From: Macrostomum lignano
Lineage: Eukaryota
Direction of reading: 5' to 3'
Assembly: GCA_002269645.1 (NCBI GenBank)
Contig: NIVC01000746.1
Location: forward strand, 310,001-374,000
DNA length: 64,000 bases
Part shown: piece after piece, positions 25,886 to 43,790 of the stretch
How the letters are laid out: the number at the start of each line of letters is the position of its first letter
Position numbering within the stretch: the stretch's first letter is position 1
The notes under the pieces: model-generated
The model's database searches: none
What the model was told of the DNA's origin: nothing
What the model saw: only the letters and a program-made list of their open reading frames with translations
Program-made: the position numbers and the translations under genes

Positions 25886-27866
25886 GGCGCGTCGCGATTA
25901 AGTTTGATAAGTTCGAGTCAAGTCAAGTTGCGAATGATTCATTTAATTTTCATTGTCTTGTATTTTGAGTTACGGCTCCATGAGTGGCCACTTATGCAAT
26001 ATTATTTATCAATTCTCCAAAGAATCATTGGGAGAAAGGTCCTACCTATATATTGATTAAGAGTTTTGTTGAGTGCTACAACTTAATATATATGTTATAG
26101 CTAAGCTTATAGGCCTAAAATTTTTATAGCAAGCAAATAACATGACTAAATTGGCTAAATAGCTTCATTGACTAAATAAAAAGCTTAGTCAATGAAAGCT
26201 AAATAAAAGGCAATGGCTTCATGACTAAATAAAATAGCTTCACAAATTGAGTAAACAAAAGAAATACACAAAATGTAGTAGATAATTTTTATCAACCAAA
26301 ATTTATAATTTAAATTGAGAACAATTTATAATTAAAATGTTGTTAAGCTAGATATGCCTATTAGTATTAGAAAATAAAAAAGGCTTATCAAATATTCTGT
26401 TTTAAGGCCAAGGCTTGGGTTTATATACTAAAATTTTATTTTTAATACTCTACACAAAGGCACATTTGATATGGCCTACATGGGCAACAACTTTAACTGG
26501 CTAGCCACATTATCTAGTCAGAGGTCTGCTGCCCTGAGCTATTGCATAAAATGCTATTGCTCAAGCTATAGAGACTACACAGTTGAGGCCAAGGGCAAAT
26601 ATCTTCTCTTTTATCCCCTTTTCCCTTTCTCTTTTCCCTCTCTCTTTTTCTTCTCTTTTCTGCCCTCTTTTCTTTCTTCTCTTCCTCTCCTCCCCTTTTT
26701 TCCCTCTTTTTTCCCTTTCTTATAAATTTTTCTCTATCTCTCTTCCTTCTTTCCCTTTTCTATATTATTTAGGTAACTAAAATAAAAAATTCCTATTCTT
26801 ACCAAGATCTACAAGTGCAATGACCTACTCATCAGTGTATTTCCAAGAAGCATCCTTTGTAATCTAGCCTTCTTTGATAGTGGCAAATGCTGGCAGCTTC
26901 CCTGTTGATTTAATTTATCTTAACTTAAGCTTCCACTATCCTAACCACAACATGCATATGGTGTCAAAATTGTGCTGTTTGAGTTAGAGTCTGACCAAGA
27001 TCTTAATCTCAATCCCAAAATTTTAAGACTTGGCCTTTTTATGAGTAAGTAATTTTGAGACATTCTCAACATTTGGAAGAATTTGAGAATAGTCAAGCAA
27101 GATTGAATTTAATATAGAAAGTATAAAAATATTGTAAAGCATAAAATGAAAAAAACAAGTAATGCATTATCTAAATTAATACATAATAAGCACTTTTTGT
27201 TTCCTAGCTTTTTTAATTAAAATGTATTACCATTACATTTCTATGAAACAGATTCAAATAAAAGTTTCACTGGCAATTTTCAAACGGAAAATACTATCCT
27301 TTATATTTTGTGTTTTGCAAAAAAGTTCTAACATATAGCACAAGCAAACTTCTTTATATGATTGGTTCTAGTGCATAGTGCAATCAAACTTTTTTGATAG
27401 GATTTTTTCCAATGCAGGCAAGCTGTGATCCTGGCTATGGCTCACCCATTAGGCCATTACCAATCTTCAACCTATTTATGTACCTTACAGTGGCATATAG
27501 TAGCATAGCCATAGCTAGTGGGTTATTAGTATAATGAACTTCTGCATATTGTGGCATATATATTTTATTATGAAGTCACTTTTTTAGGCATTTTTGTATT
27601 ATGCTACTCTTAGTCCCACCTGCACCTACCTTTATTAACATACCTAACCTAGGTGCCTGGGTGCCAGAGACCCAGACCTTCAACAGATGTTTTTCCTTTT
27701 ACATTATTCCAGAAAATTATATCTTTTAGATAAATGTTAAATAATATGTCTTAAATATAATAAAATTTGGTCAAATAGACAGTTAAAAGTTTTGTAAAAG
27801 TGAATAGTTTCTATTTAACAATACCTGCTCTTATGCTGACACTTGCAGCCCAGTCACAAATAAAGC

Positions 27867-29107
27867 ATGCAGCCAGATGACCAGTTCGACTATCAGTTCA
27901 AGCTGGTCATTGTTGGCGACACCAGCGTTGGCAAATCCTGCATTGTCCAGTGCTTCAAAACTGGCAACTATTGCGAGACCCAGGCCAACACAATTGGGGT
28001 GGACTTCGCTATGAAGACTCTGCTGATTGATGGAGTTCGCGTCAAGCTGCAGATCTGGGACACGGCCGGTCAGGAAAGGTTTCGAACGATCACTCAGTCC
28101 TATTATCGATCGGCCAGCGCTGCTATCATAGCCTACGATATTACTAGGCGGGTCAGTGATTACTTATAATATATAATCTTCCTGAAAGTTAGTAACCTGG
28201 AACTTTATTAGCAATTCAGAATCACCTTCCAACTTGTTGAACTACTCAGAGTGATCTACTAAAAATTTGAGTAATGTCATAATCTTTTTCCGACAGAGTT
28301 TAGTCATTGAAAGTTACCTTCTTTTTGTGGTTCAACGAGTTTGACTTATAGGCACTTAAATTTATGAATTTTAGTTATTCAGAATTATCTTCCAAGGGTT
28401 TGAGTCACTCAAAATAGTTTTCAAAATCAAATGCTAAGTTTTGAGTCATACAAAATCATTTTAAAGGATTTGAGTCATTCAGTATCAGTTTCCAAAGATT
28501 TTAGTCATTCCGAATCATTTTTCCAAGGATTTGAGTCATTCATAATCATCTTCCAAGGATTTGAGTCATTCATAATCATCTTCCAAGGATTTGAGTCATT
28601 CAGAATCATCTTCCAAGGATTTGAGTCATTCAGAATCATCTTCCAAGGATTTGAGTCATTCAGAATCATCTTCCAAGGATTTGAGTCATTCAGAATCCTA
28701 CGGTTTCGATGTGGTAAGACTACTGTATAATAAATGACACAATATCCAAATCACAGGAGACATTCGACTCTCTGCACCACTGGGTAGAGGACCTGAATCG
28801 GTACGCTGGTTCTCAAGCCATTCACCTGCTCATTGGCTGCAAGTGCGATCTGGAGTCTCAGCGCCAGGTGTCAGCTATTGAAGGCCGCGAATTTGCCAAC
28901 AGGCTAGCAATGCTGGCCCACCTGGAGACCTCCGCTAAAGACAACTGCAATGTTGACCGCCTGTTCCACACTGTGGCCGAGGAGCTGCTTAAAAGGATTC
29001 GCTTGTCACCGCCGGCACTTGCAGCTGACAATGACCGCCTGACTGGTCACAGGTTGTCACTGGGTGGCAACCGGCGGTCGCTTTCTAACTGTTGCTCTTC
29101 GTCTTGA
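27867..29107 (+). CDS. RAB43: Rab GTPase, Rab43/Rab19 subfamily; 2 exons, 211 aa
   Basis: Exons 27867-28151 and 28757-29107. [39 protein letters not shown] and a C-terminal CCSSS prenylation motif. FKLVIVGD...FKTG and [12 protein letters not shown] resemble Rab43. Confidence 0.9.
28490..28700. repeat. 30-bp minisatellite in the Rab intron
   Basis: ttccaaggatttgagtcattcagaatcatc units. Confidence 0.9.
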
Positions 29108-32372: not shown

Positions 32373-32410
32373 AATCCAGCCAGCGCGTTAATCCGCAGCG
32401 GGCGGCCGGC

Positions 32411-35400
32411 ATGTCAACGTCAGGTGACGCGCAGGCCACGCGGCCCCCGCATCAGCCAATCCGGCGCATCTGCTGCATCGGCGCTGGCTATGTCGGCGTG
32501 CCGTCCAGCGCAGTGATCGCTAGCAAGTGCCCGGACATTGACGTCACCGTGGTGGACATCTCGGCCGCTAAAGTGGCCGCCTGGAACTCGGACAGGCACC
32601 CGCTGTACGAGCCAGGCTTGTCCGAACTGATTAGCCAGACCAGGGGCGTCAATTTGCACTTCAGCTGCGACATGATTGGCCCGCTGGAGGGCGCCGATCT
32701 CGTGTTCATCTGCGTCAACACCCCCACCAAAGCCTATGGACTGGGCCAGGGCAAGGCGGCTGACTTGACCACGCTTGAGGCTGCGGCCAGGTGTGCCTTT
32801 GATTAGTTGGCTTTGCTTTCACGAAATTATCTTTCATAGTTCTGATTAACTGAAGACTTTCTAAGAGTTCCAGAATCCCGTTTCACCCTTATCTATTTCC
32901 TAGAATCCTGTTTCACCCTTATCTATTTCCTAGAATCCTGTTTCACCCTTATCTATTTCATACATGCGCAACTTTGGGAATCACCCGGCCGTTTCTATTG
33001 GCAACACACACATGTAAGTCGCTATTGGCTGAGAGCAGTCACGTGACTACTATTCCGTCCAATAGCGACTTACATGTGTATGTTGCCAATAGAAACGGCC
33101 GAGTGAATCCCAAGGTTGCGCCCAAGCATGATCTATTTCCTAGAATCCCGTTTCACCCTTATCTATTTCCTAGAATCCCGTTTCACCCTTATCTATTTCC
33201 TAGAATCCCGTTTCACCCTTATCTATTTCCTAGAATCCCGTTTCACCCTTATCTATTTCCTAGAACCCCGTTTCACCCTTGTCTATTTCCCGGAATCCCG
33301 TTTCACCCTTATCTATTTCCTAGAATCCCATTTCACCCTTATCTATTTCCTAGAATCCCATTTCACCCTTGTCTATTTCCCGGAATCCCGTTTCACCCTT
33401 ATCTATTTCCTAGAATCCCATTTCACCCTTATCTATTTCCTAGAATCCCGTTTCACCCTTGTCTATTTCCCGGAATCCCGTTTCACCCTTATCTATTTCC
33501 TAGAATCCCATTTCACCCTTATCTATTTCCTAGAATCCCGTTTCACCCTTATCTATTTCCTAGAATCCCGTTTCACCCTTATCTATTTCCTAGAACCCCG
33601 TTTCACCCTTGTCTATTTCCCGGAATCCCGTTTCACCCTTATCTATTTCCTAGAATCCCGTTTCACCCTTGTCTATTTCCCGGAATCCCGTTTCACCCTT
33701 ATCTATTTCCTAGAATCCCGTTTCACCCTTGTCTATTTCCCGGAATCCCGTTTCACCCTTATCTATTTCCTAGAATCCCATTTCACCCTTATCTATTTCC
33801 TAGAATCCCGTTTCACCCTTATCTATTTCCTAGAATCCCGTTTCACCCTTATCTATTTCCTAGAACCCCGTTTCACCCTTGTCTATTTCCCGGAATCCCG
33901 TTTCACCCTTATCTATTTCCTAGAATCCCGTTTCACCCTTGTCTATTTCCCGGAATCCCGTTTCACCCTTATCTATTTCCTAGAATCTCGCTTTACCCTA
34001 ATCTATTTCCTGGAATCCTGCTCTCACCCTAAACTATTTCCTGGAATCCTGCTCTCACCCTAAACTATTTCCTGGAATCCTGCTCTCACCCTAAACTATT
34101 TCCTGGAATCCTGCTTTCACCCTTATCTATTTCCTAGAACCCCGTTTCACCCTTGTCTATTTCCCGGAATCCCGTTTCACCCTTATCTATTTCCTAGAAT
34201 CCCGTTTCACCCTTATCTATTTCCTAGAATCCCGTTTCATCCTTATCTATTTCCTAGAATCCCGTTTCATCCTTATCTATTTCCTAGAATCCCGTTTCAT
34301 CCTAATCTACGATGTCGTATTTCCTGGAATCGCGCTTCACCCAAATTTGTTTCCTAGAATCTCGTTTCACCCTAATCTATTTCCTGGAATTCTTCTTCCA
34401 CCCTAATATATTTCCTGGAAACCTGCTTTCACCCATATCTATTTCCTGGAATCCTGCTTTCACCCTAATCTATTTCCTGGAATCCTGCTTTCACTCGAAT
34501 TTATTTCCTGGAATCCTGCTTTTACCCTAATCTATTTCTTAGAATTGTGCTTTGCCCTAATCTATTTCCTGAGATTGTGTTAGTTCTCAAAACATAGCTA
34601 CTCAAAATCATCAGCTTCTCATCCACCCCCTCGCCGGTCCGCAGGCACATTGTTCGCACGGCCAGCCAGCCCAAGATTGTAGTTGAGAAAAGCACCGTGC
34701 CAGTTCGAGCTGCCGAGAGCATCTGCACAATCCTGCGAGCCAACGAACGGCCAGGCGTTCGTCACACTGTGCTGTCCAATCCTGAGTTCCTGGCCGAGGG
34801 CTCCGCTGTGCAGGATCTGCTCAGGCCTGATCGGGTTCTGATTGGCGGCGAGAGAACAGATAAAGGTCAAGAAGCGGTGCAGAGGCTTGTCTCGGTAAGA
34901 AATAGTCTTTATAAATAAGAATGGAGTCGTCTATAAAGTTATTTTCACAGTTTCATGTGCTAACTGTCCACTATTGAGGAACATTGTATGCAGTTTCATG
35001 TGCTAACTGTCCACTATTGAGGAACATTGTATGCAGTTTCGTGTGCTACTGTCCACTATTGAGGAACATTGTATGCAGTTTCATGTGCTAACTGTCCACT
35101 ATTGAGGAACATTGTATGCAGTTTCGTGTGCTACTGTCATCCACCATTGAGGGACACTGTATGCAGTTTCGTGTGCTACTGTCATCCACCATTGAGGGAC
35201 ACTGTATGCTGTTTCGTGTGCTACTGTCATCCACCATTGAGGGACACTGTATGCTGTTTCGTGTGCTACTGTCATCCACCATTGAGGGACACTGTATGCT
35301 GTTTCGTGTGCTACTGTCATCCACCATTGAGGGACACTGTATGCAGTTTCGTGTGCTACTGTCATCCACCATTGAGGGACACTGTATGCAGTTTCGTGTG

Positions 35401-37210
35401 TTACTGTCATCCACCATTGAGGGACACTGTATGCAGTTTCGTGTGTTACTGTCATCCACCATTGAGGGACACTGTATGCAGTTTCGTGTGTTACTGTCAT
35501 CCACCATTGAGGGACACTGTATGGAGTTTCGTGTGCTACTGTCATCCACCATTGAGGGACACTGTATGCTGTTTCGTGTGCTACTGTCATCCACCATTGA
35601 GGGACACTGTATGCTGTTTCGTGTGCTACTGTCCACCCAGGTGTACGCTCGCTGGGTACCTAAAGAGCGCCTGGTAACAATGAACCTGTGGAGCTCCGAG
35701 CTGTCCAAGCTGGTTGCCAACGCCATGCTGGCCCAGCGCATCAGCAGCATCAATGCGGCCTCTGCAATCTGCGAGGCCACGGGAGCCGACGTGTCCGAGG
35801 TGGCCCAAGCGGTTGGCGCGGACTCGCGTATCGGGCCGAGGTTCCTCTGCGCCAGTCTGGGCTTCGGCGGCAGCTGCTTTCAAAAAGACGTGCTCAACTT
35901 GGTGTACCTGTGCGAGTGCCTCAACCTGCCGGAGGTGGCCAGGTACTGGGAATCCGTGGTGACGCTCAACCAGTACCAGAAGTACCGATTCGCCGACAAG
36001 ATTATTGTCGACCTGTTCAACACGGTAAAAGGCAAGAGGATCGCCGTGCTTGGCTTCGCATTCAAGAAGGACACCGGCGATACCAGGGAATCTCCTGCTA
36101 TTGACGTCTGCAGGAGGCTGATTGATGAGGGCGCCCTGCTCAGGGTCTACGATCCCAAGGTTTGTTGGCGTGGATCGCTGTTGATCTAGGTGCTGACTTT
36201 TCTATTGTCCTCTCGACCCCTTCCATCTCTAGGATCCGCCCCCATCAATCCACTTCCTTTTACTATCCACCGACAATCGGCTCCCATCCGAAACCCACCC
36301 CCTCCCCACAATCTGCTCCCCTCCATGACCCCTCAAAAATCTGCTCCCATCCATGACCCCTCAACAATCTGCTCCCATCCATGACCCCTCAACAATCTGC
36401 TCCCATCCATGACCCCTCAAAAATCTGCTCCCCTCCATGACCCGCCCCCCCCCACAATCTGCTCCCCTCCATGACCCGCCCCCCACAATCTGCTCCCCTC
36501 CATGACCCCTCAAAAATCTGCTCCCATCCATGACCCCTCAACAATCTGCTCCCATCCATGACCCCTCAACAATCTGCTCCCATCCATGACCCCTCAACAA
36601 TCTGCTCCCATCCATGACCCCTCAAAAATCTGCTCCCCTCCATGACCCGCCCCCCCCCACAATCTGCTCCCCTCCATGACCCGCCCCCACAATCTGCTCC
36701 CCTCCATGAACCCTCAACAATCTGCTCCCCTCCATGAACCCTCAACAATCTGCTCCCCTCCATGAACCCTCAACAATCTGCTCCCCTCCATGAACCCTCA
36801 ACAATCTGCTCTCCTCCATGACCCGCCCCCCCACACCACAATCAGCTCCCCTCCAAGACCCCCCCCCACAATCTGCTCTCCTCCATGAGCCCCCCCCCGC
36901 AATCTATTCAAAGGTGGCGAGCTCCCAGATTCGATTAGACCTGAACCAGCCCGAGCCGGATGAGGCATCTGATGCAGCTGTGCTAACAGTGTGCTCAGAC
37001 GCCTACTCAGCTGCCGAGGGCGCTCACGCTGTTGTCATCTGCACCGAATGGTCGGAATTCTCCCAGCTGGACTTTGGCCGCATCTTTGCCAGCATGGCAA
37101 AGCCGGCATTCGTGTTCGACGGGCGCAACGTGCTGGACCACGAGGCCCTGCTGCGGATCGGCTTCCGGGTGCGCGCCGTTGGCAAGCGGCTGGACTGCGG
37201 CGGGGTTTAA
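32411..37210 (+). CDS. UGDH: UDP-glucose 6-dehydrogenase; 4 exons, 481 aa
   Basis: Exons 32411-32790, 34645-34894, 35641-36159, 36914-37210 (1446 nt, in frame). [35 protein letters not shown], catalytic [31 protein letters not shown]. Confidence 0.97.
32872..34560. repeat. 30-bp minisatellite in UGDH intron 1
   Basis: ctatttcctagaatcccgtttcacccttat units. Confidence 0.95.
32959..33130. mobile_element. Hairpin MITE (CATACATGCGCAAC family) inserted in the minisatellite
   Basis: 172-bp element that is nearly palindromic; CAT...ATG ends; 8-bp duplication ATCTATTT at 32951-32958 and 33131-33138. Confidence 0.8.
34945..35635. repeat. 45-bp minisatellite in UGDH intron 2
   Basis: atgcagtttcgtgtgctactgtcatccaccattgagggacactgt units running into the 3' splice site. 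Confidence 0.95.
36300..36900. repeat. ~28-bp C-rich minisatellite in UGDH intron 3
   Basis: aatctgctcccatccatgacccctcaac units. Confidence 0.9.
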
Positions 37211-37414
37211 ACTCTGATCATCTGGGGCTGGCCCATTCAGGTGTTTCCGTTATTTTACTCATCATATGTTAGTAAGCAGGTTGAGAAGACTGCCTTTTAC
37301 TATTAAATGTTTTTGTCTCTCTATATTTAGATTGGTCCTAGATTTTTCAATAGTCATTTCAATCAATTTCAAATAATCGATTGAAATGACAATCTTTGAA
37401 AATCGTCTATCAGG

Positions 37415-38175
37415 TCTTGAGAATCGCCCATCAGGTCATGAGAATCGCCCATCAAATCTTGAGAATCGCCCATCAAATCTTGAGAATCGCCATTAAATCT
37501 TAGAATTGCTTAACGAATCTTGAGAATCGCTTAACGAATCTTGAGAATCGCTTAACGAATCTTGAGAATCGCCCATCAAATCTTGAGAATCGCCTATCAA
37601 ATCTTGAGAATCCTTTATCAATTCTTGAGAATCGCCCATCAAATCTTGAGAATCGCCCATCAAATCTTGAGAATCGCCCATCAAATCTTGAGAATCCTTT
37701 ATCAATTCTTGAGAATCGCCCATCAAATCTTGAGAATCGCCCATCAAATCTTGAGAATCGCCCATCAAATCTTGAGAATCGCCCATCAAATCTTGAGAAT
37801 CGCCCATCAAATCTTGAGAATCGCCCATCAAATCTTGAGAATCGCCCATCAAATCTTGAGAATCGCCTATCAAATCTTGAGAATCCTTTATCAATTCTTG
37901 AGAATCGCCCATTAAATCTTGAGAATCGCCCATCAAATCTTGAGAATCGCCCATCAAATCTTGAGAATCGCCCATCAAATCTTGAGAATCGCCCATCAAA
38001 TCTTGAGAATCCTTTATCAATTCTTGAGAATCGCCCATCAAATCTTGAGAATCGCCCATCAAATCTTGAGAATCGCCCATCAATTCTTGAGAATCGCCTA
38101 TCAAATCTTGAGAATCGCCCATCAAATCTTGAGAATCGCCCATCAAATCTTGAGAATCGCCTATCAAATCTTAAG
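37415..38175. repeat. 21-bp minisatellite
   Basis: ttgagaatcgcccatcaaatc units. Confidence 0.95.
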
Positions 38176-39039
38176 AATGGTGCATCAAAAGTTTGAAAAT
38201 CGCCCTCTTATCCCTCTACAATCACAGTTGCACCAACCCAAGTAAATTGGGGTGTCGTAGTTATTATTACACATAATTAATAGTGAACTCTTTAACTTTG
38301 GGTTATCAGCTGGGTACTGAAGTCATTAGCCTGGCCCAACCATTTCAACTTTTTACGCTGCCTTACAAGACAGAAACTAAATGCCATCCTGCTTCATATT
38401 AGCGAAATATGTTGTGCAATTTATTTATTGTATAGCGGTATGTATACTTGCTGTGTTCTCGCTTACTGCATGCTGAAATATCATTCTATAATTATTTATA
38501 TGTGTGCTAACTGCTAACTGATTTACTTTTTAGTGTGAATATACACTTATGACGACTTTTTTCTTATTTTTTTGATGCCTCTGTTTAAGTGTATACTTGA
38601 GGGTTTCTTTCTCCATTAGTAGCATTTTAGCAAGCTGTTTATTTTTTATATGGTAACAAGTATAAGTATCATATTATCTCTTTAGGTTATTATTAGTCTA
38701 TGGTCATAATATCTCATTAGGTCCTTAGTCTATGGTCATAGTCATTAGTCTATTAGTCATAATATCTTCTGAGGTCATTAGTCTATGATCTTATTATCTC
38801 CTTACACATTAGTCTATTAGTCATAATATCTTCTGAGGTCCTTAGTCTATGATCTTATTATCTCCTTACACATTAGTCTATGGTCATACTATCTTCTGAG
38901 GTCCTTAGTCTATGATCTTATTATCTCCTTACACATTAGTCTATGGTCATACTATCTTCTTAGGACAATGTTCTATGGTTATAATGCATCCAGCCCATGT
39001 AGTCTATGTCCTTACTAAGCCCAAACCCAGTAACATCTA

Positions 39040-39520
39040 TGATGACCGCAACCCGTCAGTCCACGGTCACACCATGACCGCAACCCGTCAGTCCACCGTC
39101 ACAACATGACCGCAACCCGTCAGTCCACGGTCACACCATGACCGCAACCTGTCAGTCCACGGTCACACCATGACCGCAACCCGTCAGTCCACGGTCACAC
39201 CATGACCGCAACCCGTCAGTCCACGGTCACACCATGACCGCAACCCGTCAGTCCACCGTCACAACATGACCGCAACCCGTCAGTCCACGGTCACACCATG
39301 ACCGCAAACCGTCAGTCCACAGTTACACCATGACCGCAACCCGTCAGTCCACGGTCACATCATGACCGCAACCCGTCAGTCCACAGTCACACCATGACCG
39401 CAACCCGTCAGTCCACGGTCACACCATGACCGCAACCCGTCAGTCCACGGTCACACCATGACCGCAACCTGTCAGTCCACGGTCACACCATGACCGCAAC
39501 CCGTCAGACCACGGTCACCC
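39040..39520. repeat. 32-bp minisatellite upstream of the BNIP1 exon
   Basis: atgaccgcaacccgtcagtccacggtcacacc units. Confidence 0.95.
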
Positions 39521-39562
39521 TAATACCGCTAATCGCCAGTCCACGCCCTTCCGGAACTTCAG

Positions 39563-40577
39563 GACGGAAACCCGCGAGTGTCGCAGACGCTGGAGGAGCT
39601 GGTCCGTCAGGACGCTCGACTCAAGGAGGCCATCGCTGACCTGCGCAGCCCGGAGGCCTGCCGCAGCCAGCGGGACCTCGCCAGCCTGGAGTCTGTCGGT
39701 CGCGAGTGCCTTCGCGAGATTCGCCGGCTGCTACGTCAACTCGACGGCCTGCTGGACGCCGTCGAGGGCGACGCCGAGCGGGCTCGAGTTGAACGCGAGG
39801 CGCGCAACTGCCAGTGCAGCCTGCAGGCGTCCCAGGAGGCGATGCGCGAGACGGCGCTGCAGCGGAAGCAGGCCTTGCAGGAGGCTGAGCGGGTGGACCT
39901 GCTGCGCAGTGATGGCGCCGACGGAGGCATAGGCGACGTTCAGGGCGATGATGGCGTTGCCAGGTGCGTGCCGATGTTTCTGTTCACTTTCAGATTTTTT
40001 TGTGTCGGAGGCCAAACTTTATGCTGATCAAGAATTAGTCATAAATTTTGTCTGTCGATCATTGCTGTCGATAGTGAGTCATAAACCTGACAATTCATCT
40101 ATCGGTCATTGCTGTCAGTAGCGGGTCATAAACCTGACAGTCCATCGGTCATTGCTGTCAGTAGCGGGTCATAAACCTGACGATTTTATCCTTCGATCAT
40201 TGCTGTCAGTAGCGGGTCATAAACCTGACAATTTATCTGTCGATTTCAGACGCCGCGTTCGCCAACGCGAGGAGACCGCCGCTGCCGCCGCCTCGCACGT
40301 GACCCAGTCGCTGCTGTTGCTTAGCAACCAGCTGGCGGAGCAGGTCGAGGCCAGCTCAGAGACCGCCAATAGGCTGCTGCGCTCGTCAGAGCAGCTCACA
40401 GAAACTGGCGAAGAGCTCAAATCGATGACGGGGCATATTAGCACCGCTAAGCGTCTGCTCACCAGACTCTCGCGCAGGGATTTCACCGACAAGGTGCTGA
40501 TCTTCCTGGCTTTTGTCTTCTTCTTTAGCACCTGCGCCTACATTGTCAAGAAGAGGACCATCGGAGTTACCGTTTGA
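39563..40577 (+). CDS. BNIP1: Vesicle transport protein SEC20/BNIP1 (ER SNARE); start codon not located
   Basis: Exons 39563-39963 and 40250-40577 join in frame (242 aa). Coiled-coil N-terminus, then SQVTQSL-like...EELKSMTGHISTAKRLLTRLSRRDFTDKVLIFLAFVFFFSTCAYIVKKR, matching the Sec20 domain and C-terminal anchor of BNIP1. Confidence 0.9.
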
Positions 40578-41360
40578 CAGCTACAGCGGTTGATTGTGCA
40601 TTACCTGTACATGCCTGTCTTTCTCCTCGCAGATTGTTCTCAATTATATACCTGATAATTGGTTTAGTTCGTTACAACTAAATACACTTATATTCTTCAA
40701 GTATGACGCGCGCTTATACACATCGCATCGAATCGGTGTTTTCATTATTTGACTGCAAAATAGTGAAGCTGTCAAACCCGTTGAAAACTTTACCGTGACA
40801 AGAGTCGCTAAGCAGTCATTGCAGACAACTCACCAGTGACTCTAGCGACTCTGAGGAGACTGTTGAGTCACGAGCGCATCACGCGAGTTGCAGAATAGTA
40901 ATAAAAGAGTCCCGGAAAAGTCGTCAAATACGAAATGCGATTATAAATTCACAAAGTGATGCAGATGCGCTTCAGACGCAACTCAGTGATTCTGCAGCGA
41001 CTCCAACACGTCTCAGATGCGACTCTATGGCCCCAGAGTCATTATAGCAGTGCCACAGGGTCGTTTCAGAGTCGCAGACAATAAAACACCTCAAATTGAC
41101 TTTTTGGCGTGACATCTTGTGCCGTGACATCTCGTCGCTTTAGAGTCCGTCTGGAGTCACTGATTGCCTATTTTACCCGTGTTACCTGCAACCGCTCTGA
41201 AACAACTCTGGAACGCTTCTTGGCCTTGATACCCTTTTTTATCAGATAACGGGTGAATTCTAAATAGTCGTTTCCCTTAGACTACTTTTAGTAGCTTGTT
41301 GCCGCATACAATATCTGTTTGAGTTCGCGAACATTTCTGCTTATTTGCCTGCGTTTAGCC

Positions 41361-42553
41361 ATGCCTCGCCAATTCGCCCTCGCCCTGGCTGTCGGCCTCG
41401 CCAGCTGCTGCCTACTGGCCGATATCGCCTTCGCCGACGGCCAGAAGAAGGAAGTCAAGGAGCTGCGCATCGGCGTCAAGAAGCGCGTCCCTGCGGAGGA
41501 GTGCACCGCCAGAGCCGCTAAAGGCGACACTGTGAGCATGCACTACACCGGGACGCTGTACTCGGATGGAAGCAAGTTCGACTCCAGCCTGGACCGGAAC
41601 CAGCCGTTCAAGTTCACGTTGGGCGTTGGGCAGGGTAAGGCGCTGCTGGTGCAGTAGGTTAGGTGTGTTGTATGGCTGAGTTAGTGGACTGTGGGAGTTA
41701 AGACGAGTCGGTGGAGTGTGCGGTTGAGTGGGTGGAGTATGCGGTATAGTGGTTGGGGTGTGCGGTAGAGTGGGTGGAGTATACGGTAAAGTGGTTGGGG
41801 TGTGCGGTAGAGTGGGTGGAGTGTGCGGTAGAGTGGGTGGAGTGTGCGGTAGAGTGGATTGAATGTGCAGTAAAGTGGGTGGAGTTTATGGTAGAGCGGG
41901 TGGAGTGTGCGGTAGAGTGGATTGAATGTGCAGTAAAGTGGGTGGAGTTTATGGTAGAGCGGGTGGAGTGTGCGGTAGAGTGGGTGGGGTGTGCGGTAGA
42001 GTGGGTGGAGTGTGCGGTAGAGTGAATGAAATCTGCGATAGAGTGGGTGGAGTGTGCGGTAGAGTGGGTGGGGTGTGCGGTAGAGTGGGTGGAGTGTGCG
42101 GTAGAGTGAATGAAATCTGCGATAGAGTGGGTGGAGTGTGCGGTAGAGTGTGTGGAGTGTGCGGTAGAGTGAATGAAATCTGCGGTAGAGTGGGTGGAGT
42201 GTGCGGTAGAGTGAATGAAATCTGCGGTAGAGTGGGTGGAGTGTGCGGTAGAGTAAATGAAATCTGCGGTAGATTGGGTGCACCCAATGGCGGCATAGGC
42301 AGACCAGCACAAGTTACCGCTCCACTCAATGCCCCCACGGCCCGCAGTGATCAAGGGCTGGGACCAGGGCCTGATCGGCATGTGCAAGGGCGAGAAACGC
42401 CGCCTGGTGATCCCGGCCCACCTCGGCTACGGCGAGAGCGGCTCGCCGCCAAAGATCCCCGGCAACTCGGCCCTCGTGTTCGAAGTCGAACTGCTGGACA
42501 TTGAGCGCAAGGACAGCGAGATGTTCAGCTCGAAGATGCCAGGCGAGCTGTGA
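41361..42553 (+). CDS. FKBP2: ER-lumen FKBP-type peptidyl-prolyl isomerase (FKBP2/FKBP13); 2 exons, 159 aa
   Basis: Exons 41361-41634 and 42348-42553. Signal peptide, [69 protein letters not shown]; C-terminal GEL resembles an ER-retention tail. Confidence 0.95.
41710..42275. repeat. 21-bp G-rich minisatellite in the FKBP2 intron
   Basis: gagtgggtggagtgtgcggta units. Confidence 0.9.
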
Positions 42554-42864
42554 CAGTTTGAGCAGGGTAGTGTGGAGTAGGTCTGCCTCTGGTCAGCAGG
42601 TGTTTCTTATCTGTTTTCATCGTATTGAAATTAATCTTGTGGCCGGTTTATCGCATCCGCTAAGCAGTGCGTGCCAATCGGTGAAAATGGTTTCAGTTGG
42701 CGATCAAAAATGCCTGTTAGTTTGTTTGTCCACGCTAACCATTTCTATTCCTATCGCTGACTAAACTTGAAATGCGAAATCATTCGAAATTAAGCCCGTA
42801 TAAAAGTGGAACGATCACAATTTTTTGCGACCGTCAAAAATGCGTCACTGCCTGTCACACTTTT

Positions 42865-43790
42865 GACCGTCAAGTGTGACCGTCAGTTAATAATGTCACC
42901 CGTCAAGTGTGACCGTCAGTTAGTAATGTCACCCGTCAAGTGTGACCGTCAGTTAATAATGTGACCCGTCAAGTGTGACCGTCAGTTAATAATGTGACCC
43001 GTCAAGTGTGACCGTCAGTTAATAATTTTACCCGTCAAGTGTGACCGTCAGTTAATAATTTTACCCGTCAAGTGTGACCGTCAGTTAATAATTTTACCCG
43101 TCAAGTGTGACCGTCAGTTAATAATGTGACCCGTCAAGTGTGACCGTCAGTTAATAATGTGACCCGTCAAGTGTGACCGTCAGTTAATAATTTTACCCGT
43201 CAAGTGTGACCGTCAGTTAATAATTTTACCCGTCAAGTGTGACCGTCAGTTAATAATTTTACCCGTCAAGTGTGACCGTCAGTTAATAATGTGACCCGTC
43301 AAGTGTGACCGTCAGTTAATAATGTGACCCGTCAAGTGTGACCGTCAGTTAATAATGTGACCCGTCAAGTGTGACCGTCAGTTAGTAATGTGACCCGTCA
43401 AGTGTGACCGTCAGTTAATAATTTTACCCGTCAAGTGTGACCGTCAGTTAATAATGTGACCCGTCAAGTGTGACCGTCAGTTAATAATGTCACCCGTCAA
43501 GTGTGACCGTCAGTTAGTAATGTGACCCGTCAAGTGTGACCGTCAGTTAATAATTTTACCCGTCAAGTGTGACCGTCAGTTAATAATGTCACCCGTCAAG
43601 TGTGACCGTCAGTTAGTAATGTGACCCGTCAAGTGTGACCGTCAGTTAATAATGTCACCCGTCAAGTGTGACCGTCAGTTAATAATGTCACCCGTCAAGT
43701 GTGACCGTCAGTTAATAATGTGACCCGTCAAGTGTGACCGTCAGTTAGTAATGTCACCCGTCAAGTGTGACCGTCAGTTAATAATGTGAC
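42865..43790. repeat. 33-bp minisatellite
   Basis: cccgtcaagtgtgaccgtcagttaataatgtga units; an inverted unit occurs at ~43910-43935. Confidence 0.95.

What the first reader, a model, noticed from the sequence alone, without database searches (positions are those of the whole stretch)
39530..39600. BNIP1/Sec20 lacks a genomic ATG; the spliced leader may supply the initiator Met
Seen: the first conserved exon starts in phase 0 at TTCAG|GAC GGA AAC (39563), with an in-frame TAA at 39530 and no in-frame ATG until far inside the protein. Adding a single Met gives MDGNPRVSQTLEELV..., close in length to the recalled human N-terminus (MAAPQDVHVRICNQEIV). Established: flatworm SLs end in AUG, which can act as the start codon. 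Inference: an essential SNARE whose translation depends on trans-splicing. Alternative: a cis-spliced upstream exon, e.g. 38381-38437 (ATG...GCG|gtatgt, in frame) or ATG|gtaaca at 38650-38652.
Basis: partly seen in the sequence, partly recalled or inferred. Interest (0 to 1): 0.75.

Follow-up and report, generated by a model that had tools for sequence, protein, structure and literature searches.

The report
Spliced leader supplies SEC20 start codon
In the flatworm Macrostomum lignano the SEC20/BNIP1 SNARE gene has no start codon of its own and most likely takes it from the AUG that ends the trans-spliced leader, a mechanism known in flatworms since 2006, so this is a tidy new example and not a new kind of biology.

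Summary
The window is Macrostomum lignano scaffold NIVC01000746.1. The SEC20/BNIP1 gene has two exons, 39563-39963 and 40250-40578. Its reading frame begins directly after CTTCAG at 39563, an in-frame TAA lies 33 nt upstream, and the first in-frame ATG is codon 94.

- The published M. lignano spliced leader (SL) ends in ATG and is followed by a GTAAG donor.
- CTTCAG fits the published trans-splice acceptor motif.
- Public protein models start exactly at D (39563).
- In the predicted SL-joined mRNA, the SL AUG is the first AUG in any frame and opens a 243-aa ORF.
- 21 orthologues begin with Met 0-11 alignment columns before the position of D1, so no coding exon is missing.
- Three genomic copies, one about 90% identical, all keep AG|GAC with no ATG, and the coding sequence is under purifying selection.

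New context: SEC20 lies downstream of UDP-glucose 6-dehydrogenase (UGDH) on the same strand. The two are named as genes of one published transcriptional unit. Deposited models cis-splice UGDH exons in frame onto 39563, and the NCBI model at this locus is a 713-aa fusion.

This is a new member of a known kind (Cheng et al. 2006). Interest is low to moderate.

The parts
39557..39562 (+). 3' splice acceptor CTTCAG, the proposed SL trans-splice site, also used by cis donors of the upstream gene
   Evidence: Sequence. It fits the [T/C]TNCAG trans-splice acceptor motif of M. lignano (PMC8629364). Deposited chimeric models join exactly here. An AG is kept at this position in all three genomic copies; the paralogue L002 has TTGCAG.
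39530..39532 (+). In-frame TAA that closes the reading frame 33 nt upstream of the exon
   Evidence: L001 has the same TAA; L002 has a TGA 72 nt upstream. No in-frame ATG lies in between in any copy.
39563..39963 (+). SEC20/BNIP1 exon 1, phase 0 from its first base (GAC = Asp), with no initiator ATG
   Evidence: Donor is CAG|gtgcgt at 39964. UniProt A0A1I8I6W5 is identical to the spliced translation and starts at this Asp.
39964..40249 (+). Intron 1 of SEC20 (gtgcgt...tttcag), containing a tandem repeat of about 43-47 nt
40250..40578 (+). SEC20 exon 2: Sec20 domain, C-terminal hydrophobic tail anchor, and TGA stop
37211..39556 (+). Spacer between the UGDH stop and the SEC20 acceptor (UGDH 3'UTR plus presumed outron). 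It is 2352 nt to the exon, of which about 1573 nt are tandem repeats: a 21-mer array at 37400-38205, 31/63-mers at 38675-38964, and a 32-mer x15 at 39042-39518.
   Evidence: The repeat-adjusted distance is 779 nt, below the 1-kb operon threshold used in PMC8629364.
32399..37210 (+). Upstream same-strand gene, UDP-glucose 6-dehydrogenase (UGDH): 4 coding exons, genomic ATG at 32411, TAA at 37208-37210
   Evidence: tblastn of PAA51590.1 gives 100% identity over four blocks; Pfam families on the called gene.
37169..37174 (+). Cryptic donor CGG|gtgcgc inside the last UGDH exon, joined to 39563 in the deposited 713-aa UGDH::SEC20 model PAA77400.1
34895..34900 (+). UGDH exon-2 donor TCG|gtaaga. The equivalent donor in paralogue L002 is joined to the SEC20 acceptor in the deposited model PAA93980.1.

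Best explanation
SEC20/BNIP1 of Macrostomum lignano is the downstream gene of an operon-like transcriptional unit that begins with UDP-glucose 6-dehydrogenase (UGDH). Transcription reads through the repeat-rich spacer. The SEC20 mRNA 5' end is then made by trans-splicing the 35-nt spliced leader (SL) onto the acceptor CTTCAG|G at 39562/39563. The SL ends in AUG and the exon starts in phase 0, so the mature mRNA reads ...UUAUUGCAUG|GAC GGA AAC. The SL AUG, 32 nt from the cap, is the first AUG in any frame and initiates a 243-aa tail-anchored SNARE, MDGNPRVSQTLEELV.... The genome itself encodes no initiator codon for this protein.

Shown here: the gene structure, the absence of a genomic ATG in three copies, the frame compatibility with the published SL, and the completeness of the N-terminus against orthologues. 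Also shown is that deposited transcript models start at the acceptor or splice onto it.

Inferred: that SL addition happens at this site in most transcripts, and that ribosomes start at the SL AUG.
For: - Species and gene: best hits are M. lignano SEC20 proteins at 98-100% identity, and Pfam Sec20 matches at E=2e-21.
- SL: the published 35-nt SL ends in ATG, and a GTAAG donor follows it in the SL RNA gene (PMC8629364). The ATG is also noted as the likely start codon in PMC10468722.
- Acceptor: CTTCAG fits the top trans-splice acceptor motif [T/C]TNCAG.
- Transcript 5' ends: UniProt A0A1I8I6W5 (identical to the window protein) and A0A1I8FUZ1 start exactly at D. The annotation pipeline trims the SL and cuts transcriptional units at SL peaks (PMC5730564). 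The locus tags Mlig028127g1 (UGDH) and g2 (SEC20) follow that scheme.
- Internal control: the UGDH models start at the first base after CAG at 32399, as expected for SL-trimmed transcripts.
- Predicted mRNA: the SL contains a single ATG. It is in frame and opens a 243-aa ORF. The next AUG in any frame is 282 nt downstream.
- N-terminus: 21 of 21 full-length orthologues start with M 0-11 alignment columns before the position of D1, for example M-DSNAVISELKDNII against DGNPRVSQTLEELV.
- Conservation: three genomic copies keep AG|GAC, an upstream stop and no ATG. Window against the ~90% paralogue shows 14 synonymous and 5 non-synonymous codon changes.
- Read-through: deposited UGDH::SEC20 models show that pre-mRNA spans both genes and that 39563 is a real 3' splice site.
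- Mechanism precedent: Cheng et al. 2006 JBC, as cited in PMC9851317 and PMC12582326. [quoted passage not shown]
Against: - No read, EST or assembled transcript carrying the SL joined to GACGGAAAC was reachable. No Logan-sourced M. lignano protein turned up in the protein collection for this gene, and the paper supplements held lack these gene ids.
- At the window's own locus the NCBI annotation does not separate SEC20. It gives only a UGDH::SEC20 fusion, PAA77400.1.
- The one NCBI model of SEC20 alone (PAA51589.1, Mlig028127g2) starts 21 nt downstream of the acceptor, at Gln8. I cannot explain this offset.
- Translation from the SL AUG has never been shown in M. lignano, as far as the papers searched say.
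Confidence: 0.8

Rival explanations
1. SEC20 is made mainly or partly as an in-frame UGDH::SEC20 fusion. UGDH exons, with the genomic ATG at 32411, are cis-spliced onto 39563 and supply the start codon.
For: Two deposited models do exactly this, and both are in frame. PAA77400.1 is at this locus (donor 37168|gtgcgc), and PAA93980.1 is at paralogue L002 (exon-2 donor). Flatworm acceptors are reported to be widely shared between cis- and trans-splicing (PMC12582326).
Against: The two loci use different donors, one of them a cryptic site inside the last coding exon and the other skipping two UGDH exons. That pattern fits low-level by-products of read-through better than a designed isoform. A 470-aa or 212-aa UGDH piece on the N-terminus of a tail-anchored SNARE has no counterpart in the 21 orthologues aligned, all about 220-270 aa and starting near D1. 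Separate SEC20-only models also exist. Two phase-0 donors meeting a phase-0 acceptor is about a 1-in-9 coincidence.
Confidence: 0.08
2. An unannotated cis-spliced 5' exon in the spacer supplies the ATG, for example the reader's 38381-38437 or the single-codon ATG|gtaaca at 38650.
For: Both candidates exist in the sequence with the stated phase. 38381-38437 has a fair donor, CG|gtatgt, matching 6 of 8 consensus positions.
Against: In the 2.35-kb spacer, 57 phase-0 ATG...|GT combinations occur by chance. The candidates are 33% GC against 65% for the coding sequence (GC3 78%) and would encode MPSCFILAKYVVQFIYCIA, which is absent from every deposited model. Nineteen extra residues would exceed the 0-11 alignment columns that 21 orthologues show before D1. 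No deposited model uses them.
Confidence: 0.03
3. Translation starts at an internal genomic AUG (Met at 39842, codon 94), or at a non-AUG codon, on a transcript without the SL. This would give a SEC20 that is N-terminally truncated or non-canonically initiated.
For: Met94 is in frame and would retain the Sec20 domain and the tail anchor. UniProt models A0A1I8F4Y2 and A0A1I8HDF7 include 21 and 6 nt of sequence upstream of the acceptor, so some transcripts lack trans-splicing at their assembled 5' end.
Against: The 93 codons before Met94 are conserved against orthologues across the whole N-terminal helical region. They show mostly synonymous change between paralogues, so they are translated. Transcripts containing outron sequence are what unprocessed pre-mRNA would look like.
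Confidence: 0.04
4. Artefact: a pseudogene or an assembly error has removed the true ATG.
For: M. lignano assemblies are repeat-rich and duplicated, and a 32-mer tandem array ends 44 nt upstream of the exon.
Against: Three independent genomic copies agree at the junction. All keep intact 242-codon ORFs, with 14 synonymous and 5 non-synonymous changes between the divergent pair.
Confidence: 0.01

Closest known systems
[quoted passage not shown]
   Same: The SL ends in AUG. The acceptor places that AUG in frame with a conserved ORF that has no genomic start codon, and the predicted N-terminus matches orthologues.
   Different: The species is different: a free-living macrostomorph, for which no systematic list of SL-AUG-dependent genes turned up in the papers searched. 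The gene is different. Here neither the SL junction nor translation was observed, whereas Cheng et al. are cited as having identified cDNAs that require the AUG (I could not read that paper).
SL-resolved operons / transcriptional units of M. lignano (Wudarski et al. 2017; Ustyantsev & Berezikov 2021)
   Same: There is a same-strand upstream gene. The repeat-adjusted spacer is 779 nt, under 1 kb. The locus tags are g1/g2 of one transcriptional unit, and deposited models span both genes.
   Different: The raw spacer is long at 2.35 kb, because about two thirds of it is tandem repeat. The distance was measured from the stop codon, not from the poly(A) site, which I could not locate.
Sec20 / BNIP1, Qb-type SNARE of the ER syntaxin-18 complex
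   Same: Pfam Sec20 domain, C-terminal tail anchor, N-terminal helical region, and a length of about 240 aa.
   Different: It has an Asp/Gly-rich linker (VDLLRSDGADGGIGDVQGDDGVAR) longer than in most orthologues, and no genomic start codon.

Membership tests
Sec20/BNIP1 SNARE family | Sec20 domain (PF03908) above the curated threshold | tested here: met
   E=2.1e-21, 76.1 bits against a cut-off of 27, residues 148-236 covering 89 of 92 profile positions.
Sec20/BNIP1 SNARE family | C-terminal hydrophobic tail anchor directly after the Sec20 domain, with an overall length of about 220-270 aa | tested here: met
   VLIFLAFVFFFSTCAYIV followed by KKRT aligns with the hydrophobic C-termini of 21 orthologues. 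This was judged by inspection; no transmembrane predictor was run.
SL-AUG-initiated flatworm mRNAs (Cheng et al. 2006) | The species has a spliced leader whose last three bases are AUG | tested here: met
   From the literature only: the 35-nt SL ends ...TTGCATG and a GTAAG donor follows it in the SL RNA gene (PMC8629364; PMC10468722). No SL RNA gene lies in the window.
SL-AUG-initiated flatworm mRNAs (Cheng et al. 2006) | The SL is actually trans-spliced onto this acceptor | tested here: inconclusive
   The evidence is indirect. The acceptor motif fits. Public models start exactly at the acceptor. The locus tags are g1/g2 of one transcriptional unit, in a pipeline that cuts units at SL peaks. 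No SL-bearing read or contig was reachable.
SL-AUG-initiated flatworm mRNAs (Cheng et al. 2006) | The SL AUG is in frame with the conserved ORF, with no stop in between | tested here: met
   SL plus exons translates to MDGNPRV... through to the stop, 243 aa.
SL-AUG-initiated flatworm mRNAs (Cheng et al. 2006) | No genomic in-frame AUG is available upstream of the conserved N-terminus, so the SL AUG is required | tested here: met
   TAA lies 33 nt upstream, and the first in-frame ATG is codon 94. The same holds in two other copies. Orthologues start 0-11 alignment columns before D1.
SL-AUG-initiated flatworm mRNAs (Cheng et al. 2006) | Ribosomes initiate at the SL AUG | not testable with these tools
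   This needs ribosome profiling, N-terminal proteomics or a reporter assay.
M. lignano operon / polycistronic transcriptional unit | Adjacent same-strand genes with a repeat-adjusted distance under 1 kb and the downstream gene trans-spliced | tested here: inconclusive
   Same strand and a 779-nt adjusted distance are met. Deposited models spanning both genes support read-through. The trans-spliced status of SEC20 is inferred, not seen.

The most novel reading that the evidence does not exclude
Both retained paralogues of an essential ER SNARE depend entirely on SL trans-splicing for their start codon. The same acceptor is also used to make in-frame UGDH::SEC20 fusion mRNAs. If the fusion were translated and functional, it would be a tail-anchored, ER-tethered UDP-glucose dehydrogenase. 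Competition between cis- and trans-splicing at one acceptor would then choose between two different proteins.
Probability: 0.05. Interest if true: 0.6.

Novelty: new member of a known kind. Interest (0 to 1): 0.25.

Why it matters
It gives a clean and easily tested example, in a flatworm where transgenesis works, of a conserved housekeeping gene whose protein cannot be predicted from the genome alone. The example also shows how such genes get mis-annotated. Public records list this SEC20 as 5'-partial or as a 713-aa 'hypothetical protein' fused to UGDH. A gene finder or annotation pipeline for SL-bearing flatworms should add the SL AUG at phase-0 trans-splice acceptors. The biology itself has been established since 2006, so the gain is in annotation and as a handy test case, not in concept.

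Tried and rejected
1. I looked for direct transcript evidence and found none.
   - The exact protein MDGNPRV... is not in the 15-billion-protein collection.
   - No Logan-sourced M. lignano protein turned up for this gene.
   - The gene ids Mlig028127, Mlig019937 and Mlig001104 occur in no searchable paper or held supplement.
2. I looked for an SL RNA gene in the window. None was found, allowing up to 3 mismatches.
3. I looked for flatworm orthologues to ask whether SL-AUG dependence of SEC20 is older than Macrostomum.
   - The single-sequence search returned only M. lignano.
   - The profile search returned mainly nematodes, plus Selaginella.
   - The best HMMER representatives are unnamed or arthropod.
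   - Two fetched contigs (L004, L005) come from unknown organisms, and one has a 285-nt 5'UTR with its own ATG, so nothing can be concluded.
4. Cheng et al. 2006 is not held, so I could not check whether SEC20 is on the S. mansoni list.
6. I rejected assembly error and pseudogene explanations on three concordant copies and the ratio of synonymous to non-synonymous change.
7. I considered a second acceptor, TCGCAG|ACG at 39587, which would also be in frame with the SL AUG, as an explanation for PAA51589.1 starting at Gln8. That model includes the CAG itself, so this does not explain it.

Full report
**What is there**

The window is Macrostomum lignano. The spliced translation of the flagged gene is 98-100% identical to M. 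lignano SEC20 entries. Window 22402-50577 is 100% identical to GenBank scaffold NIVC01000746.1 of assembly GCA_002269645.1, Mlig_3_7.

The gene has two exons, 39563-39963 and 40250-40578, joined across a gtgcgt...tttcag intron. The product is 242 aa without a Met. It carries a Pfam Sec20 domain at residues 148-236 (E=2.1e-21, 76 bits against a cut-off of 27) and a C-terminal hydrophobic anchor.

**Check of the observation**

- The exon starts in phase 0 directly after CTTCAG at 39563.
- The first upstream in-frame stop is TAA at 39530, and the 10 codons in between hold no ATG.
- The first in-frame ATG is codon 94, at 39842.

The feature is not a local sequence error. Two further genomic copies were fetched from the same assembly: L001 (98% identical) and L002 (about 90%, a diverged paralogue). 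Both have the same AG|GACGGAAAC junction, an in-frame stop 33 or 72 nt upstream, and no in-frame ATG. Between the window and L002, the coding sequence differs at 14 synonymous and 5 non-synonymous codons. Both copies are therefore kept under purifying selection without a genomic start codon.

**Is an N-terminal exon missing?**

An exhaustive HMMER search found 450 relatives. I aligned 21 full-length ones. All start with Met, 0-11 alignment columns before the position of Asp1 of the M. lignano protein. One starts M-DSNAVISELKDNII against DGNPRVSQTLEELV. Adding one Met gives a normal SEC20 N-terminus, so a further coding exon is neither needed nor expected.

However, the 2.35-kb spacer holds 57 phase-0 ATG...|GT combinations by chance. 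The candidates are 33% GC against 65% for the coding sequence (GC3 78%). No deposited model contains them.

**The spliced leader (SL)**

M. lignano has one 35-nt SL, CGGTCTCTTACTGCGAAGACTCAATTTATTGCATG. In the SL RNA gene it is followed by a GTAAG donor, so the ATG belongs to the SL exon. The top motif at trans-splice acceptors is [T/C]TNCAG, which CTTCAG fits (PMC8629364). A later Macrostomum genome paper notes that the terminal ATG is the likely translation start codon (PMC10468722).

Joining this SL to the two exons in silico gives an mRNA with these properties:
- The SL ATG is the only ATG in the leader and the first in any frame.
- It lies in frame with the 243-aa ORF MDGNPRV....
- The next ATG in any frame is 282 nt downstream.

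No SL RNA gene lies in the window.

**Transcript evidence reachable here**

All of this evidence is indirect.

UniProt A0A1I8I6W5 is identical to the window protein and, like A0A1I8FUZ1, starts exactly at Asp1. Two other entries run 2 and 7 codons into the sequence upstream of the acceptor, as unprocessed pre-mRNA would.

The NCBI locus tags on the sister scaffold are Mlig028127g1 (UGDH) and Mlig028127g2 (SEC20). In the published scheme, g1 and g2 are genes within one transcriptional unit. The pipeline sets their boundaries from SL-containing reads (SL trimmed) and poly(A) signals (PMC5730564).

There is an internal control. The UGDH models start at the first base after CAG at 32399, which is the signature of an SL-trimmed 5' end.

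I could not reach any read or contig with the SL joined to GACGGAAAC. No Logan-sourced M. lignano protein turned up in the protein collection for this gene, and the held supplements lack the gene ids.

**New context: an operon-like unit and chimeric models**

UGDH lies upstream on the same strand, at 32399-37210. The stop-to-acceptor distance is 2352 nt, of which about 1573 nt are tandem repeats. The repeat-adjusted distance of 779 nt is under the 1-kb operon criterion of PMC8629364.

Two deposited NCBI models cis-splice UGDH exons in frame onto exactly 39563:
- PAA77400.1 (713 aa, this locus) uses a cryptic donor CGG|gtgcgc inside the last UGDH exon, at 37168.
- PAA93980.1 (456 aa, paralogue L002) uses the exon-2 donor and skips two intact UGDH exons.

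These models show that pre-mRNA spans both genes and that 39563 is a real 3' splice site. They fit the reported sharing of acceptors between cis- and trans-splicing in flatworms (PMC12582326).

I read them as minor read-through products for three reasons:
- The two loci use different and odd donors.
- None of the 21 aligned orthologues has such an N-terminal extension.
- SEC20-only models exist.

At this locus the public annotation offers only the fusion. That may be because SL reads map equally well to the near-identical copy; this is inference.

**Mechanism**

The steps are read-through transcription from UGDH, SL trans-splicing at 39562/39563, and a 32-nt 5'UTR ending in the SL AUG, which starts SEC20.

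The principle is established. Cheng et al. 2006 is cited as showing that in S. mansoni the SL AUG is in frame in 28% of trans-spliced mRNAs and is required by more than 40 cDNAs (PMC9851317; PMC12582326). I could not read that paper itself.

**Unexplained**

The one NCBI model of SEC20 alone (PAA51589.1) starts at Gln8, 21 nt downstream of the acceptor. A second acceptor at 39587 does not account for it.

UniProt A0A1I8FUZ1 lacks 24 residues of the acidic linker, and its junction cannot be drawn with canonical GT...AG sites. It may be an artefact.

**Verdict**

- Observation: confirmed.
- Interpretation: supported at about 0.8. SL addition and initiation at the SL AUG are inferred, not seen.
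- Novelty: a new member of a known kind.
- Interest: low to moderate. The main practical points are the mis-annotation (5'-partial or fused models) and the usefulness of this gene as a test case in a flatworm where transgenesis works.

Noticed in passing
window 32390-32413: Deposited UGDH models begin at the first base after ...tccgcag| at 32399 (RAAGMSTSG...). If the SL is added there, its AUG is in frame 4 codons upstream of the genomic ATG at 32411, predicting an alternative N-terminus MRAAGM.... This would be a second in-frame SL AUG in the same gene cluster, here not required.
   Followed up: partly
window 27840-27870: A Rab/Arf-like GTPase gene (211 aa, genomic ATG at 27867) is preceded by cacttgcag|CCCAGTCACAAATAAAGCATG. 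If it is trans-spliced at 27849, the SL AUG would open a 5-codon upstream ORF (ATG CCC AGT CAC AAA TAA) ending just before the real ATG.
   Followed up: no
window 32402-40577 (GenBank PAA77400.1, BOX15_Mlig019937g1): The public annotation of this very locus merges UGDH and SEC20 into one 713-aa 'hypothetical protein, partial'. The paralogous locus (L002, PAA93980.1, locus tag suffix g5) carries a 456-aa fusion that skips UGDH exons 3-4, although those exons are intact there.
   Followed up: yes
window 22400-42560: The run of same-strand genes is a Pyr_redox_2 protein, a Rab/Arf-like GTPase, UGDH, SEC20 and an FKBP with a signal peptide (ATG at 41361). The suffix g5 on the paralogue's UGDH::SEC20 model hints at a long multi-gene transcriptional unit.
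   Followed up: partly
window 37400-38205, 38675-38964, 39042-39518, 40055-40244, 41680-42280, 42860-43200: Nearly every intron and spacer around these genes is filled with its own tandem array: a 21-mer of about 33 or more copies, a 63-mer x3.5, a 32-mer x15, a ~45-mer x4, and further arrays in the FKBP intron and downstream. The 32-mer unit contains an ATG, but its period is not a multiple of 3 and the last copy is out of frame with SEC20.
   Followed up: partly
L001 10001 (= window 39584); GenBank PAA51589.1: The SEC20-only NCBI model starts at Gln8, 21 nt downstream of the acceptor and not behind any AG. The cause is unknown; it may lie in how the annotation pipeline sets boundaries.
   Followed up: partly
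window 39891-39963 / UniProt A0A1I8FUZ1: This 218-aa isoform model lacks the linker VDLLRSDGADGGIGDVQGDDGVAR. The junction needs a non-canonical donor (GG) or an in-exon deletion, so it may be an assembly artefact.
   Followed up: partly
UniProt A0A1I8F... entries P0004 and P0005: Two M. lignano UniProt entries, named 'HTH myb-type domain-containing' and 'Dynein_attach_N domain-containing', look like frameshift-riddled translations of SEC20 transcripts. They drift in and out of the SEC20 frame, so the names are probably spurious.
   Followed up: no
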